Positions 2,640 through 57,300 of a DNA stretch of 64,000 bases are shown here, piece by piece (within the stretch, counting starts at the first letter, position 1; the number at the start of each line of letters is the position of its first letter). Where the stretch lies: contig MU058451.1 of the NCBI GenBank assembly GCA_013265495.1, positions 760,584 through 824,583 on the forward strand, read 5' to 3'. The translations under genes were made by a program, and so were the position numbers. The DNA comes from Vicugna vicugna (Eukaryota). A model generated the notes under the pieces. The model did no database searches. It worked only from the letters and a program-made list of their open reading frames with translations, and was not told the DNA's origin.

Positions 2640-2830
2640 ATATTGGTTAAACACAGACTGGCTTCGAATCACGGCTCCATCCATTACTGTCTGGCTGTGT
2701 GATCTTGGGCAAATTATTTATTGTCTCTGTGCCTTAGTGTCCTCATCTATAAAAAAGAGGAAGTACTAGTTTTTACCTCACAAGGTTGGCATGAGTATTC
2801 AATGAGTCTATATTTTTAAAAGTTTAGAAC
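2640..2830 (+). mobile_element. MIR SINE fragment
   Basis: Contains 'ctggctgtgtgatcttgggcaaattattt...tctgtgccttagtgtcctcatctataaaa', resembling the MIR core. Confidence 0.8.
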
Positions 2831-2949
2831 AAACCCAGCACATTGAGATAATATATGTATATATGTAACATATATAAAAGGATGTACACTAGGTAGTAGA
2901 AAACTAGCATGGCTTCTTAAGCAGTGGGTGTTAAAATGGTGTGTCCTGA

Positions 2950-3590
2950 TACACAGGGCATAGGGAGGGAAGTTCTGGAGGCTGGCCGATGAGATGGGGC
3001 AGATTCCAGGGATGTTTGGATGAAGACAGTGAGGGCTTGGAGCAGAGTAGAGAAAAACTAAGAGGTTTGAATAGAAGATGTATTTATTTTTTTGGAAGGG
3101 TATGTGTATAAGTTTTTACTGAATTATAGTCAATTTACAATGTTGTGTCAATTTCTGGTGACCAGCATAATGCTTCAGTCATACGTGAACATACATATAT
3201 TTGTCTTCATAGTCTTTTTCACTGTAAGTTACTACAGAATATTGAATATAGTTCCCTGTGCTATAGAGTATGAACTTGTTGTTTATCAGATTTTGTGAGA
3301 ATCGTCTTATATTTGAAAGCGAGAAACACTGCCAGAGTTCAGTAGGTGTTCTGTGCAATTCAGTGGGTTTGTAGATGCAATTCTTGGTGTATTTGTGGGC
3401 GAGGGTGAGCTGTTAGTCTCTTTACTCGCCATCTTGGCACCGCCCCCCAGAAGACATATTTCAAAGAAAGAAAGAACCGTTAGAACTTGTGGGATTGGGG
3501 TGGGTGTGAGGATGTGAGAAGTTGTAGCCAAAGATGACTCTAATGTTGAGGCTTTGAGAAGCTGGGAAGAGCCGGGGAGGGGGCATGGAC
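2950..3590 (-). mobile_element. L2 LINE fragment split by the L1-derived insertion at 3086-3448
   Basis: Purine-rich L2-like sequence on both sides of the insertion, e.g. 'gccaaagatgactctaatgttgaggctttgagaagctgg'. Confidence 0.5.
3086..3448 (-). mobile_element. Internally deleted or spliced L1: 5'UTR head (3287-3448) fused to 3' tail (3086-3286), with TSD
   Basis: The minus strand starts 'ggggggcggtgccaagatggcg', like an L1 5' end with a YY1 motif. It then switches to the L1 3' tail 'ataaacaacaagttcatactctatagcacagggaac' and ends in an A-rich tail. The TSD is agaagatgtattt (3073-3085) / agaagacatattt (3449-3461). Confidence 0.8.
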
Positions 3591-4060
3591 AACAAATGAG
3601 AGAGTTATGCATGAATGGACCTCAAAGCTCTGTAAATGAAATCTACAGCACTTAGCCTGAATGTGCTCAAATAATAATAATCATTAGCTAGAATTTCATC
3701 TTCCTTTGTGCTTTTCTGCAATTCTTTTGCCATCTTTTCTGGGAACAATTCAGGATGTCAGTGCTTTTTGAACAGAAAGCAAATTCTAAAAGAAGAGATT
3801 TCTGATTTAAAAACATGGACTTTCCAAGCATTTATTAAATTATAAAATAAGACAAAGATAAGGAAAAACTTAACTTTCCAATCCCTTGGAATTTTACAGA
3901 ATGAAGTTGAAAACTTATTTCAGTTGGGAATAGAAAAAACACAAACAATGAAGCACAATAAAACAAAACAAAAACTCGGTTAAGAAATGACCCTGAGGCA
4001 AAGTCTTAAATCTTAAAGGTCAACAGGTCGGTATACTTTAAAAACTGTAATTATAGCTCT

Positions 4061-16112: not shown

Positions 16113-16405
16113 CCAGACTGGCCCATCTTACCCAAAATGGAATTCTTCATTTCTTTTTCAATTCTAATAATAAGGAGAGTTATGGTTGCTCCAAAGATGC
16201 TGATCAATGTGTACTTCCAGCAGCAGAAATTAGAGGGATGGGATGTGTTTCTCTAAACAGATACATGTGTGTCTCTTGCCTTGTGTTCTACTTACATGGG
16301 CCATGCATGCATTACTCTGTGGTCATTGTATATTAAATAATGTAAATAATGTATTAATATTTTGCTTCCAAGATTTTAATAACTTCATAACATATCCTAT
16401 TATTT

Positions 16406-16753
16406 CTTGAAATTTTTAAAAATTGAAGTATAGTTGATTTATAATGTTGTGTTAGTTTCTGGTGTACAGCCTAGTGATTCAGTTATACATACATGTATAT
16501 ACATTCTTTGTCATATTCTTTTTCATTATAGGTTATTACAAGATACTTAATACAGTTCCCTGTGACAAATGAACTTAATTACAAAAGAGAAACAGACTCA
16601 CAAACATTGAAAATAAACTTACGGTTACCAAAAAGGAAAGGGGATGGAGGAGGGATAAATTAGGAGTTTGGGATTAGCAGATATACACTACTATATATAA
16701 AATAGATAAACAACAAGGTCCTACTGTATAGCACAGTGAACTATATGCAGTAC
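16406..16753 (-). mobile_element. Twin-primed (5'-inverted) L1 3' end
   Basis: The L1 terminus lies on the minus strand (about 16410-16564) and is joined to the upstream L1 segment in plus orientation (16565-16753). TSD cctattattt at 16396-16405 / 16754-16763. Confidence 0.8.
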
Positions 16754-17624
16754 CCTATTATTTTTAATTATGAATTTTTAGACATATCTTAAGACATAAA
16801 ATCTTTGGAGATAAGAGTACAGAGAATAGTGTGATGAACTGCCATATACCTATCACTGAGATTTAATACATATTTGCTTCATTTTTCAAAGTATTTGAAA
16901 GTCAATCACAGACCTATACCATTCCATTTCTAATATTCTCTTCTATGTGCATCTCTAAAAGAATTTTTCTATAACAACACTAGTGTCGCCACACCTATAA
17001 AAATTAATAATTTTTATTAGTAAACATAAGTAGTAAAGTTTTTTTCTTAACTTTATGTAACAGAGAATGTATTTTACGTGTTAAGTTTTTAAGTTTATAC
17101 TCAGAATCTTCTTGAAATTTATATCATTATCAACAGACAATAGTTTTGTTTTTTATATTAAAAACCTTGACAGAACATTATGGAATGAAACATTTCTAGT
17201 GTTCCATCCTAGAGGTTTTATTGAAAAGCTCTCAGAATAAATCTACATCATTTTTCTCTCACATTCTTTAACATAACGTTTTCTTGTTCAAAATACATGT
17301 GCTCTTATCACCGTGAATAATCATTTATTCCTTTATGATTCTTTTTTGGTAGGACTTGATGGCTTACTGTGAGAACAGCTGAATCTCCTCTCAAGTCCTA
17401 CTCCTGGTGTACGTGAGAACAGATGACACATTAAACTGTTTCCATTCTATGGGATTTAAGTCACTAATATGTTGGATGGTCAGGTGTAAGAATTACCACA
17501 TTAGACCTTCGAATTTCTCGCTAAGGACCTTGTTAGAAACCATGTATTTTCACAATGTCCGTGGATGCTTTATAAGAACAGCTACTAAAAGGTGACCAAT
17601 ACAAAAGGTCATCCTGGACACTGG

Positions 17625-18180: not shown

Positions 18181-18462
18181 CATATCTTTCAAGGTCTTTC
18201 TCCCTCTTAGAAGTTTGTTCAAGTTCCATGATCTTTTCTGCCTTCATCTGATGAAACAGTGGGACACTTGAGAGCTGTCTGGGAGAATTATGGAGGCATG
18301 TACCATATAAGTGAGACTGAACCTCACCTGTCTTAAATAATATGTGCTGTTTTCCTGTGAGTACACATGCTAGTTTCTCTCTGGCATTCTCTCTAGTCAC
18401 CAAGTTTTCTGGTACCTGGTCTTTGCTTTAAATAGTTCGTAGATAGAAATCATAGATTTTTT

Positions 18463-19286
18463 TTTTCTTTTTTGAAAAACTGAAGTCTATCTGATTTACA
18501 ATGTTGTGTTAGTTTCTGGTGTACAGCACAGTGATTCAGTTATGCACATATATATACACATTCTTTTTCATTATGGGTTATTACAAAATACTGCATATAG
18601 TTCCCTGTGCTATATAGTAGGACTTTGTTGTTTGTCTTTTTTATATATAGTAGTTTTTATCTGCTAACTGCAAGCTCCTAGTGTATTCTCCTTTCCCCTT
18701 TGGTAACCATAAATTTGTTTTCTATGTCTATGAATCTGTTTCTGTTTTGTAAAAAACTTAATTTGTTTCATTTTTTTAGATTTCATATTTAAGTGATACC
18801 ATATGATACTTGCCTTTCTCTGTCAGGTTTACCTCNNNNNNNNNNNNNNNNNNNNNNNNNNNNNNNNNNNNNNNNNNNNNNNNNNNNNNNNNNNNNNNNN
18901 NNNNNNNNNNNNNNNNNNNNNNNNNNNNNNNNNNNNNNNNNNNNNNNNNNNNNNNNNNNNNNNNNNNNNNNNNNNNNNNNNNNNNNNNNNNNNNNNNNNN
19001 NNNNNNNNNNNNNNNNNNNNNNNNNNNNNNNNNNTTTCGAATTAGAGTTCTCTCCAGATATATGCCCAGGAGTGGGATGGCTTGATCATATGGTAAGTCT
19101 GGTTTTAGTTTTTAAGGAGTCTCCTTACTGTTTTCCACAATGGTTGCACTAAATTACATTCCTAGCAACAGTGTAGGAGGGTTCCCTTTTCTCCACAGCC
19201 TCTCCAGCATTTATCCTTTGTGGGCTTTTGAATGATAGTCATTCTGACCAGTGTGAGGTGATACCTCATTGTAGTTTTCATTTGCA
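18463..19286 (-). mobile_element. 5'-truncated L1 3' end spanning a gap
   Basis: Artiodactyl-type L1 tail 'tttacaatgttgtgttagtttctggtgtacagcacagtgattcag', plus 3' ORF2-region sequence after the gap. TSD agaaatcatagatttttt (18445-18462) / agaaatgatacatttttt (19287-19304), with 2 mismatches. Confidence 0.9.
18836..19034. other. Assembly gap (199 N) inside L1
   Basis: N run. Confidence 1.
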
Positions 19287-21991: not shown

Positions 21992-22274
21992 GTTTTTTTT
22001 TTTTTAATTGAAGTATAGTTGATTTACAATGTTGTGTTAATTTCTGGTGTACAGCCTAGTGATTCAGTTATACATATGTATATATTCTTTTTCAAGGTTA
22101 TTACAAGCTATTTAATATAGTTCCCTATACTATATGGTAAGACCTTGTTGTTTATCTATTTTATATACAGTAGTTTTTATCTGTTAATCCCAAACTCCTA
22201 ATGTATCCCTCTTCCCTCTTCCCCCTTTAGTAACCATCAGCTGGTTTTCCGTGCCTGTGAGCCTTAGAGATGAT
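21992..22274 (-). mobile_element. 5'-truncated L1 3' end
   Basis: Poly-T, then 'aattgaagtatagttgatttacaatgttgtg'. TSD core cacactagcag at 21981-21991 / 22275-22285. Confidence 0.9.
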
Positions 22275-22435
22275 CACACTAGCAGACTTTTGAAGAGAAC
22301 AGCACCTGCTCTCGGCCTGCGGTCCCAGGCCACAGGGTGCGGCCGTTTCAGTGCCAGCGTGTCGACCGCCGTGTGGATGTCGCTGGCGTAGGCTGGGTTT
22401 TTCCACCGTTAACTGGACGAGAACTTGTTCCTTAC

Positions 22436-22541
22436 ATACACTTTTGCTTGTACAAGTGCTGGCTTCTGCCCACACGAGCAACTCCAAACCCCAAACTGTA
22501 AGTCTCATTTGTGGTTACTGGGATGGGACCTGATGGAAAAC
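22436..22541 (-). other. Candidate internal exon (106 nt)
   Basis: Acceptor 'ttttttttttgtctttatggtcag|G' and donor 'TAT|GTAAGG'. One open frame: FPSGPIPVTTNETYSLGFGVARVGRSQHLYKQKC. Confidence 0.2.
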
Positions 22542-23190
22542 CTGACCATAAAGACAAAAAAAAAAAATCATGTGAAAAAAAAAGTCCTCTGGTACAGAAA
22601 TCAGGAAAGGATTCAAATAATATATTTGTGTAACCAACACTTGCTTCCCTAACGCTCACAGCAGCCTGCCGGCAACATGAGCCGGGTGGTGACGACACCG
22701 CCACCACCACCACTTTTTGATCTGAATCCCCACGGCAGGGTCGCTGGTCTCTCAAGACTAGTCTTTCCCCGCCAGAGTCTGAGGGTCTCCCCCTCTCTCT
22801 TTCCCACCTTGGTTGCTTTCCTGAGGCTGCTCTGCCTCAGAAGTGGGTCTCTGCAGCCTCACCTCAGCTCCAGAAGTGGAGCGCCCCTCGCACCACAGTG
22901 TTATAAGTTCTTCTGTCTCTAAAGCAGGAATGACTCGCTCCTGCCCAGTGGATGCACCATGTTAGGCCCCTCAAAACTCTCCTGCTGCCTCCAAGTTGTA
23001 CAGTAATAACAGTAGCAGTCATATTTATATCTGACATAGGAAATGACTGTTTCTCTTATAGATGTAAGTTATAATATGACACTTACAGTAAGATACTGTA
23101 TCTTAATATTAAAAAAACTGTTCATGGACTCATCTTTAGAGAACTTCACTCTTTTTATCAAACTAACAAAGTCTAAAGTAAAACCATATC

Positions 23191-23593
23191 TTTATTTTTT
23201 TTTTAATTGAAGTATATTCCATTTACAATGTTATGTTAATTTCTGGTGTACAGCATAGTGATTCAGTTATACATGTGTGTATATGTATATATTTCTTTTT
23301 ATATTCTGTCTCATTATAGGCTATTACAAGGTATTGAATATAGTTACCTGTGCTATACAGTAGGATCTTGTTGTTTATCTATTTTATATATAATAGTTAG
23401 TATCTGCAAATTCTGAACTCCAAATTTATCCCTCTAGATCTCCTTCCCCCTTTGGTAACCATAAATTTGTTTTCTGTGTCTGTGAATCTATTTCTGTTTT
23501 GTAAATAAGTTTATTTGTCTCATTTTTTCAGATTCCATGTGTAAGCGATATCATATGGTATTTTTCTTTCTCTCTGGCTTGCTTCACTTAGTA
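23191..23593 (-). mobile_element. L1 3' end running into a gap
   Basis: Poly-T, then 'aattgaagtatattccatttacaatgttatgttaatttctggtgtacagcatagtgattcag'. Confidence 0.9.
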
Positions 23594-23776
23594 NNNNNNN
23601 NNNNNNNNNNNNNNNNNNNNNNNNNNNNNNNNNNNNNNNNNNNNNNNNNNNNNNNNNNNNNNNNNNNNNNNNNNNNNNNNNNNNNNNNNNNNNNNNNNNN
23701 NNNNNNNNNNNNNNNNNNNNNNNNNNNNNNNNNNNNNNNNNNNNNNNNNNNNNNNNNNNNNNNNNNNNNNNNNNNN
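23594..23776. other. Assembly gap (183 N)
   Basis: N run. Confidence 1.
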
Positions 23777-30858: not shown

Positions 30859-31083
30859 GAGGGTGGGAAGGGATAGACTGGGATTTCAAAATTGTAGAAT
30901 AGATAAACAAGATTACACTGTATAGCACAGGGAAATATACACAAAATGTTATGATAAATCACAGAGAAAAAAATGTGACAATGAGTGTGTATATGTCCAT
31001 GAATGACTGAAAAATTGTGCTGAACACTGGAATTTGACACAACATTGTAAAATGATTATAAATCAATAAAAAATGTTAAAAAA
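30859..31083 (+). mobile_element. Young 5'-truncated L1 3' end (camelid-type)
   Basis: Perfect 15-bp TSD aagatagtttactgt (30844-30858 / 31084-31098), with aataaa and an A tail. Confidence 0.93.
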
Positions 31084-31088
31084 AAGAT

Positions 31089-31542
31089 AGTTTACTGTAA
31101 TACCCCTTGTGACATAGGACAAGGTGGAGTAGGTGTGGCTAGTGACAAGGGGGTGAATAACACAGTAACGTCAGCCTTGATGGGGTGACCAGAGAGCACC
31201 TCATTTTACATCTTTCCTAAAATTTTCACATCTAATATAACAGAGCAGTTCCAAACTAAATGAAATCTCTCTGGAAATTATTTTATTGGTCTACTGTTCA
31301 CTTTTCAACATTTACAGTTTACTGTAATACCCCTTGTAACATAGGACAAGGTGCAGTAGGTGTGGTTAGTGACCAGGGGGTGAATAACACAGTAACGCCA
31401 GCCTTGATGGAGTGACCAGAGAGCATCTCATTTTTACATCTTTCCTAAAATTTTCACATCTAATATAACAGAGCAGTTCCAAACTAAATGAAATCTCTCT
31501 GGAAATTATTTTATTGGTCTACTGTTCACTTTTTAACATTTA
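31089..31542. repeat. Direct tandem duplication, two copies of about 227 bp
   Basis: Units are 31089-31315 and 31316-about 31542. I count 8 substitutions and 1 indel by eye. Confidence 0.95.
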
Positions 31543-56699: not shown

Positions 56700-57300
56700 T
56701 GCCTTCACCTGCGAAGCAATTGAAAGCCCCACCTCCCCCTCGCCCAAACCAGAGGGCAACCTCGAGGCGCAAGAACGTCAGTCCTTAAGAAGTTACCTCG
56801 CCTTCCTCGGCCAGCACTCCAGTTCTCTCCCTGTGGTAGGTCACTTCAGTTTAAATGGAAGAGGATTTCTGTTGTCAAAAGCTCATGGTAGGATGAGTTC
56901 CTCGGGTGAAAAACCAAGCCCCACCAGTACTGAAGGTGAAAAAGAAATATATCAAGAGGAGAAATCTATTCAGAGATTGATTTTGTTTCCTTCAACAGCC
57001 AAAGTGGATTTTGAAAATCAATAAGTCCTTTGCAGTGCTGCCAAAAGCCAGCAAACGTGCCAAGTCATAAGCTGTCAGAGGAGTAACTACAGGAAGGCTG
57101 CCAGGTCCGAGGCGGCTGCCTGGCCGCCTGGCTGCCACTGACCTCGTGGCGGTGTGGAGCTGGAGCCGGAGCCGGAGCCGTAAATCTTCGCCTTGTCGCT
57201 GCCGCAGGGTGACTTGGCTTCGCGGGCAGCATACGGAGGTGAGTACTTCAGGTCTGGGGAGCCTCTCTGACCTGGTGACTGAGTTCACACGCTCGTGTAA
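56700..57300. promoter_or_regulatory. CpG micro-island, probable promoter with + strand first exon ending at 57238
   Basis: About 16 CpG between 57105 and 57295 in an otherwise CpG-poor window. Consensus donor GAG|GTGAGT at 57238/57239. The gene is not identified. Confidence 0.6.
57156..57179 (+). repeat. (GGAGCY)4 hexamer repeat
   Basis: ggagct ggagcc ggagcc ggagcc. Confidence 0.9.

What the first reader, a model, noticed from the sequence alone, without database searches (positions are those of the whole stretch)
3073..3461. Mini-L1: complete 5' head fused directly to the 3' tail, TSD-flanked, possibly a spliced L1 or a non-autonomous family
Seen in the sequence: a 363-bp minus-strand insert with a 162-bp L1-like 5' start (GGGGGG...CCAAGATGGCG), a 201-bp L1 3' tail, an A-rich end and a 13-bp TSD. 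All ORF1/ORF2 sequence is missing. Ordinary truncated L1s lose the 5' end, but this one keeps it. The junction is ...AAAATCTG|ATAAACAAC, and the L1 copy at 16701-16715 in this window reads AATAG|ATAAACAAC, so the 3' breakpoint falls right after an AG. Established knowledge: spliced L1 RNAs can retrotranspose (SpIREs). Inference: either a single intron of several kb was spliced out before insertion, or this is a member of a short non-autonomous L1-derived family that keeps the internal promoter. From memory, artiodactyl L1 5'UTRs have a GTAG close to this point, but I cannot verify that here.
Basis: partly seen in the sequence, partly recalled or inferred. Interest (0 to 1): 0.7.

Follow-up and report, generated by a model that had tools for sequence, protein, structure and literature searches.

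The report
ORF-less mini-L1 retrocopy, head joined to tail
A 363-base insert made only of the first 162 bases and the last ~175 bases of a LINE-1 element was pasted in by the LINE-1 machinery; it would matter only if it belongs to a self-copying short L1 family, a kind one 2012 paper said had not been seen for L1, and I could not test that.

Summary
On the minus strand, 3086-3448 is a 363-nt insert between two 13-nt direct repeats. The repeats differ only at one decayed CpG (11/13; chance about 5e-4). It starts with a G run and a YY1-type core at nt 13-21, as a full-length L1 transcript would. After 162 nt it runs straight into the last 174 nt of an L1 3' UTR, which is 73-81% identical to nine L1 3' ends in the window. 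It ends in a 19-nt extra piece and A7T. No ORF1 or ORF2 sequence is present.

All four L1 copies that cover the tail breakpoint have AG just before it. That fits a splice acceptor, but its pyrimidine tract is weak.

Four other first-reader notes on other DNA of this genome describe the same architecture at 328-396 letters. These are untested leads.

Best reading (0.72): a trans-mobilised retrocopy of an ORF-less L1 RNA whose join already existed in the RNA. That splits into a replicating mini-L1 lineage (about 0.40) and a fresh splice (about 0.32). One-off deletion or template jump: about 0.22.

The parts
3449..3461 (-). 5' copy of the 13-nt target-site duplication (AAATATGTCTTCT)
   Evidence: It is 11/13 identical to 3073-3085. 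The two differences are TG versus CA at one ancestral CpG. Empirical chance 5.4e-4.
3287..3448 (-). Head: 162 nt starting at an L1-type transcription start (G6 run at 3443-3448)
   Evidence: No other copy in the window. No Rfam family. No tRNA. CpG observed/expected 0.58, with 5 CpG kept.
3428..3436 (-). YY1-type core CAAGATGGC at element nt 13-21
   Evidence: Searches give the position. That this is the same offset as the YY1 box of human L1 comes from established knowledge (Athanikar et al. 2004, listed as a reference). Binding was not tested.
3278..3294 (-). Head/tail junction AAAATCTG|ATAAACAAC (join between 3287 and 3286; the G at 3287 could come from either side)
   Evidence: It is unique in the window even with 3 mismatches allowed.
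3113..3286 (-). Tail: the last 174 nt of an L1 3' UTR, ending ...TTCAGTAAAAA
   Evidence: blastn and alignment against nine L1 3' ends in the window, 73-81%. It lies between the window's two L1 tail groups: 81.0% and 78.7% to their majorities. At 41 diagnostic columns it follows group A 18 times, group B 17 times and neither 6 times.
3115..3120 (-). AGTAAA hexamer, a variant poly(A) signal in the place of the AATAAA found in three of the seven L1 3' ends that reach this point (the other four have AATT); it lies 21 nt before the A run
   Evidence: alignment columns about 190-200. The coordinate and the 21-nt spacing were counted by hand from the sequence printed; the script reported a different AGTAAA, in the head. 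The signal's function is inferred.
3094..3112 (-). 19-nt extension (CTTATACACATACCCTTCC) between the canonical L1 end and the A run; possibly a 3' transduction or a lineage-specific end
   Evidence: It follows no other L1 3' end in the window.
3086..3093 (-). Short A tail (A7T)
3073..3085 (-). 3' copy of the target-site duplication (AAATACATCTTCT)

Best explanation
This is a retrocopy of a roughly 0.36-kb LINE-1 RNA with no ORFs.

Steps, with their basis:
1. The RNA began at the normal L1 start. Shown by the sequence: the insert abuts the duplication with a G run, and a YY1-type core sits at nt 13-21.
2. The RNA already lacked everything between 5' UTR nt 162 and a point 174 nt before the L1 end. 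This is inferred.
3. It was polyadenylated 21 nt after an AGTAAA hexamer. This is inferred.
4. Because it encodes nothing, ORF2p from a competent L1 must have copied it in trans by target-primed reverse transcription. The nick was at a bottom-strand site ATTT/CA, the A tail was used for priming, and a 13-nt duplication was left. The hallmarks are shown; trans action is inferred.

The join most likely arose as a splice onto the AG in the L1 3' UTR. My odds within this reading:
- The parent was itself a mini-L1, meaning a replicating non-autonomous lineage that keeps the first 162 nt of the internal promoter: about 0.40 of the total.
- Each copy is a fresh spliced isoform of a full-length L1 and a dead end, as SpIREs are: about 0.32.
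For: - The insert boundaries are exact and flanked by an 11/13 repeat whose only differences are a decayed CpG.
- The 5' end is untruncated and L1-like.
- The 3' part is a true L1 3' end followed by an A run.
- AG precedes the tail breakpoint in 4 of 4 L1 copies, against a 7.2% background.
- The tail belongs to neither L1 tail group in the window. It is about 19-21% from both majorities, while group members are 1-13% from their own, and the flanking repeats show no non-CpG change. This hints at a separate source lineage.
- Spliced L1 RNAs are known to retrotranspose (PMC5860796).
- Leads only, not tested: four other first-reader notes in this genome report L1 5' end plus 3' end units of 328-396 letters.
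Against:
- The donor GT is untested.
- The acceptor has a weak pyrimidine tract, 0.35-0.5.
- The junction G is ambiguous, and AAAAT..G is shared by both parents, as a template jump or a repair deletion could leave.
- L1 proteins strongly prefer their own RNA in cis.
- A human 5' UTR cut down to its first 97 nt plus the part from nt 622 on kept only weak promoter activity.
- Eickbush and Eickbush 2012 state that no L1 SIDE had been observed.
Confidence: 0.72

Rival explanations
1. Post-insertion deletion. A full-length L1 inserted here with this duplication, and a later genomic deletion of about 6 kb removed everything between 5' UTR nt 162 and the last 174 nt.
For: Both ends and the duplication would look exactly as seen. 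The shared AAAAT..G at the two breakpoints is the kind of microhomology that end-joining leaves. No second copy was found in the window.
Against: AG exactly before the tail breakpoint would be a 7% coincidence. Four other notes describing nearly the same size elsewhere in the genome would be hard to explain if they hold up.
Confidence: 0.12
2. One-off template jump. During this insertion, ORF2p copied the last 174 nt of a full-length L1 RNA. It then jumped to nt 162 of the same or another L1 RNA and ran to the 5' end.
For: Template switching by L1 reverse transcriptase is the accepted route to sense-oriented 5' chimeras such as U6/L1 (PMC13174262). There is 1 nt of certain microhomology plus the nearby AAAAT. 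Internally deleted L1 insertions are seen in cell culture.
Against: Switches usually land on the 3' end of the acceptor RNA, not inside it. The AG coincidence applies again. So does the recurrence lead.
Confidence: 0.1
3. The head is L1 only in its first 45 nt or so. The rest comes from another RNA, so the unit is a three-part chimera and not L1 5' UTR joined to L1 3' UTR.
For: Only the first 45 nt or so could be recognised as L1-like. No comparator for nt 46-162 was available.
Against: No Rfam family or tRNA matches the head. There is no internal break, A run or repeat inside the head.
Confidence: 0.05

Closest known systems
SpIREs, spliced integrated retrotransposed elements of human L1 (Larson et al. 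2018, PMC5860796)
   Same: Full-length 5' end; an internal segment missing from a 5' UTR point to a downstream AG; target-site duplication, A tail and an endonuclease-type site. Made from processed L1 RNA.
   Different: The SpIREs studied there splice within the 5' UTR or into ORF1, and their spliced mRNAs can still yield ORF2p. This one has lost both ORFs and must be copied wholly in trans. The donor GT is unverified here. The 162-nt head is longer than the 97 nt left upstream of the splice in the human forms.
SIDEs (short internally deleted elements) of R2/R1 in Drosophila; TbRIME (related to L1Tc/ingi-clade elements) and Ag-Sponge (Eickbush and Eickbush 2012, PMC3414825)
   Same: Architecture: the 5' end plus the 3' end of the parent LINE, no ORF, dependent on the parent's enzyme.
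   Different: Those are documented multi-copy lineages. The Drosophila SIDEs use a 5' ribozyme, and R1 and R2 recognise their own 3' UTR. Here the parent is mammalian L1 (Pol II internal promoter, priming on the A tail), and multi-copy status is not shown. The paper says no L1 SIDE had been observed.
HAL1 (half-L1)
   Same: A non-autonomous derivative of L1 that is moved by L1.
   Different: HAL1 keeps ORF1. This unit has no ORF at all.
U6/L1 and other 5' RNA/L1 chimeric insertions (Law and Burns 2026, PMC13174262)
   Same: A sense-oriented RNA piece fused to a 5'-truncated L1 3' end inside one duplication.
   Different: The 5' piece here is L1's own 5' end, not a small RNA or a gene's first exon. 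Rfam finds nothing.

Membership tests
L1-mediated (endonuclease-dependent TPRT) insertion | Target-site duplication of about 7-20 nt flanking the insert exactly | tested here: met
   13 nt, 11/13 identical, differences only at one CpG, chance 5.4e-4.
L1-mediated (endonuclease-dependent TPRT) insertion | 3' A tail directly before the 3' duplication | tested here: met
   A7T at 3086-3093. It is short.
L1-mediated (endonuclease-dependent TPRT) insertion | Nick site resembling 5'-TTTT/AA on the bottom strand | tested here: inconclusive
   The inferred site is ATTT/CA (read). It is T-rich and plausible, but not the consensus.
SpIRE-type spliced L1 retrocopy | 5' end at the L1 transcription start | tested here: met
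   The G run abuts the duplication and the YY1-type core is at nt 13-21. The comparison with human L1 comes from knowledge.
SpIRE-type spliced L1 retrocopy | AG at the 3' edge of the missing segment in full-length L1 | tested here: met
   4 of 4 L1 copies read ...AAAA(T/A)AG|A(T/C)AAAC. The AG background is 7.2%, and the pyrimidine tract is weak at 0.35-0.5.
SpIRE-type spliced L1 retrocopy | GT at the 5' edge of the missing segment in full-length L1 | not testable with these tools
   The window has no L1 5' UTR, and none could be obtained from any collection.
SpIRE-type spliced L1 retrocopy | The spliced RNA isoform exists | not tested
RNA runs hold 15-25% of the words of 2700-3900, but which part is unknown.
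SIDE/RIME-like non-autonomous LINE derivative | Only the 5' and 3' ends of the parent LINE, with no ORF | tested here: met
   162 nt plus 174 nt. No Pfam family on the open frames. 363 nt in all.
SIDE/RIME-like non-autonomous LINE derivative | Many copies at different loci that share the junction and have their own duplications | not testable with these tools
   One copy in 64 kb. Pattern scans for the junction or the head-to-tail architecture were empty. Only untested notes exist: s1-223556, s1-234063, s1-243785, s1-268326.
SIDE/RIME-like non-autonomous LINE derivative | Copies form their own lineage, distinct from full-length L1 subfamilies | tested here: inconclusive
   The tail lies between the two L1 tail groups in the window and is 19-21% from both. 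That rests on one copy and nine comparators only.
HAL1 | Carries ORF1 | tested here: not met
   No ORF1. The longest junction-spanning ORF is 59 aa and has no homologues.
U6/L1-type small-RNA chimera | The 5' part is a known small RNA, typically full-length | tested here: not met
   No Rfam match on the head even at E up to 10. No tRNA.

The most novel reading that the evidence does not exclude
This is one copy of a replicating, ORF-less 'L1 SIDE'. That would be a camelid family of about 0.36 kb keeping only the first 162 nt of the L1 internal promoter and the last ~175 nt of the 3' UTR. It would be transcribed from its own copies and moved in trans by L1 despite cis preference. The rate of first-reader notes suggests hundreds of copies (5 notes in about 29 Mb surveyed, untested). 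It would be the mammalian counterpart of TbRIME and of the Drosophila R2/R1 SIDEs.
Probability: 0.38. Interest if true: 0.7.

Novelty: new variant of a known kind. Interest (0 to 1): 0.45.

Why it matters
L1 proteins strongly prefer the RNA that encoded them. Among L1-derived elements, that is the usual explanation for why mammals have HAL1 (which keeps ORF1) but no reported families made of bare L1 ends. A 2012 survey states that no L1 SIDE had been observed.

A multi-copy mini-L1 would show two things. First, 162 nt of 5' UTR plus about 175 nt of 3' UTR are enough for transcription and for capturing ORF2p in trans. Second, it would give a natural minimal substrate for mapping what L1 recognises.

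If it is only a one-off or a dead-end spliced copy, it is an ordinary curiosity that extends the SpIRE idea to a 5' UTR to 3' UTR splice in a non-primate.

Tried and rejected
Read and contig test:
- Read laying on 2700-3900 with four runs at 80% likeness was meant to count contigs crossing the junction, to find full-length L1 heads running past nt 162, and to find an empty site.

Protein route:
- The 59-aa ORF that spans the junction has no homologues.
- A 187-aa window ORF is not on record.
- 142 open frames of 70 aa or more gave only one chance Pfam hit.
- I therefore had no gene or L1 protein with which to fetch orthologous or other camelid DNA.
- The window's L1 pieces are all 400 nt or less at the 3' end, and they carry at most about 19 codons of ORF2.

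Collection scans:
- Viral contigs, searched for the head, the junction and an L1 tail: 0 hits.
- Metagenome contigs, searched for the head-to-tail architecture: 0 hits.
- The head 21-mer in metagenome contigs and genome contigs gave three hits that match over only 23-25 nt; I take these as chance.

Other checks:
- The search of earlier findings by sequence was blank.
- Rfam and ARAGORN found nothing.
- The RNA fold is unremarkable, z = -0.86.

Rejected readings: HAL1, small-RNA chimera and tRNA-type SINE.

Not done:
- N runs were left untouched.

Full report
**Observation.** I read 3073-3461 on the minus strand.
- The stretch begins with AAATATGTCTTCT (3461-3449) and ends with AAATACATCTTCT (3085-3073).
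- The two 13-mers differ only by TG versus CA at one position pair. That is what two independent decays of an ancestral CpG would leave.
- A match of 11/13 or better within 21 offsets occurs in 5.4e-4 of random pairs from this window.

**Anatomy.**
- The head (3448-3287, 162 nt) abuts the duplication with GGGGGG. It carries CAAGATGGC at nt 13-21, followed by AACAGCTC.
- By established knowledge this is the layout of a full-length L1 transcript start. The YY1 box of human L1 is at the same offset (Athanikar 2004, listed).
- Only about the first 45 nt can be called L1-like on that basis. The window holds no other L1 5' end for comparison.
- Rfam and ARAGORN find no small RNA or tRNA in the head.
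- The head keeps 5 CpG (observed/expected 0.58).

**Tail.**
- 3286-3113 (174 nt) aligns with nine L1 3' ends in the window at 73-81%. It ends ...TTCAGTAAAAA, where those that reach this point end in A runs.
- It is followed by 19 nt that follow no other L1 3' end in the window (3112-3094), and then by A7T.
- AGTAAA sits 21 nt before the A run. I counted this spacing by hand from the printed sequence. It is a normal hexamer-to-cleavage spacing, so the RNA was probably cleaved a little beyond the usual L1 end. The cause may be a short 3' transduction or a lineage-specific end. This is inferred.
- The window's L1 tails fall into two groups. The mini-L1 tail is 81.0% and 78.7% identical to their majorities. 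At 41 columns that tell the groups apart it follows one group 18 times, the other 17 times and neither 6 times. Group members are 1-13% from their own majority.
- The duplication shows no non-CpG change. Much of the tail's distance is therefore likely inherited from a source lineage not represented among the window's L1 copies. This is a hint, not proof, of a separate lineage.

**Junction.**
- The join reads ...CACAAAATCTG|ATAAACAAC.
- Four L1 copies that cover this point read ...AAAA(T/A)AG|A(T/C)AAACAAC. AG therefore precedes the tail's first base in 4 of 4 copies, against an AG frequency of 7.2% in these L1 pieces.
- That favours a splice acceptor, but three points weaken it. The preceding 20 nt are only 35-50% pyrimidine. 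The G at 3287 could belong to either parent. Both parents share AAAAT..G next to the breakpoints, which a template jump or an end-joining deletion could also use.
- The donor side (GT after head nt 162 in a full-length element) could not be examined.

**How it got here.**
- The exact boundaries, the 13-nt duplication, the A tail and a T-rich inferred nick site (ATTT/CA) are the marks of L1 endonuclease-dependent target-primed reverse transcription.
- The unit encodes nothing. Its longest junction-spanning ORF is 59 aa without homologues, and its open frames match no Pfam family. The enzyme must therefore have come from another L1 in trans.

**One-off or family?** This is the question that sets the interest, and I could not answer it.
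- The window has one copy.
- Read laying was set up to count contigs crossing the junction and to catch full-length heads.
- The frame overlapping them was left out. Only local scripts on the whole window and local ORF and translation listings touched them. I worked beside them.
- Scans of the viral, metagenome and genome collections found no camelid L1.
- No protein handle was available for fetching other camelid DNA.
- The scan's notebook lists four other first-reader notes on other DNA of this genome with the same architecture: a 328-bp unit, a 362-nt unit, and stretches of 372 and 396 letters. None has a follow-up.
- If they hold up, five such units in about 29 Mb surveyed would argue for a recurrent form of fixed size and against a private deletion. 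I use them only to set odds, not as support.

**Comparison with known kinds.**
- The nearest mechanism is the human SpIRE. The SpIREs studied there can still yield ORF2p and are regarded as dead ends with weak promoters.
- The nearest architecture is the SIDE of R2/R1, together with TbRIME. The paper that names SIDEs states that an L1 SIDE had not been observed.
- HAL1 is excluded because it carries ORF1.
- Small-RNA/L1 chimeras are excluded because the 5' piece is L1's own start.
- From memory, repeat databases have a class for 'L1-derived' retroposons. I could not check whether a camelid entry like this one exists.

**Verdict.**
- Best reading (0.72): a trans-mobilised retrocopy of an ORF-less L1 RNA whose join was already in the RNA. 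That splits into a replicating mini-L1 lineage (about 0.40) and a fresh splice (about 0.32).
- Later genomic deletion: 0.12.
- One-off template jump: 0.10.
- Head only partly L1: 0.05.

Noticed in passing
They lie about 50-85 nt upstream of the insert in its own orientation, in flanking DNA.
   Followed up: no
window 2700-3900: Four RNA-seq or metatranscriptome runs labelled 'reproductive system metagenome' hold 15-25% of the sampled words of this 1.2-kb stretch. The mini-L1 makes up 30% of it. Which part is transcribed could not be seen.
   Followed up: no
window 16402-16754: Two L1 3' pieces lie head to head. A minus-strand tail (16402-16564) meets a plus-strand piece (16561-16754) that covers the L1 region just upstream, with an overlap of about 25 nt in L1 coordinates. 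This is the pattern of a twin-priming inversion.
   Followed up: partly
window 18836-19034 and 23594-23776: N runs cut two L1 3' pieces (18460-18821 and 23191-23573) about 380 nt from their A tails, just inside the end of ORF2.
   Followed up: no
window 31089-31542: A 227-bp unit occurs twice in tandem at 96% identity, directly after the A tail of the L1 3' end at 30906-31083. Tandem Repeats Finder did not report it.
   Followed up: partly
window 22251-22750 and 56751-57250: These are the only 500-bp windows with GC above 0.5 and CpG observed/expected above 0.6. No Pfam family matches the open frames there.
   Followed up: no
window 3094-3448 (minus): In the minimum-energy fold, the 5' G run pairs with the CCCUUCC at the end of the 19-nt extension. 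The fold as a whole is no better than shuffles (z = -0.86).
   Followed up: no
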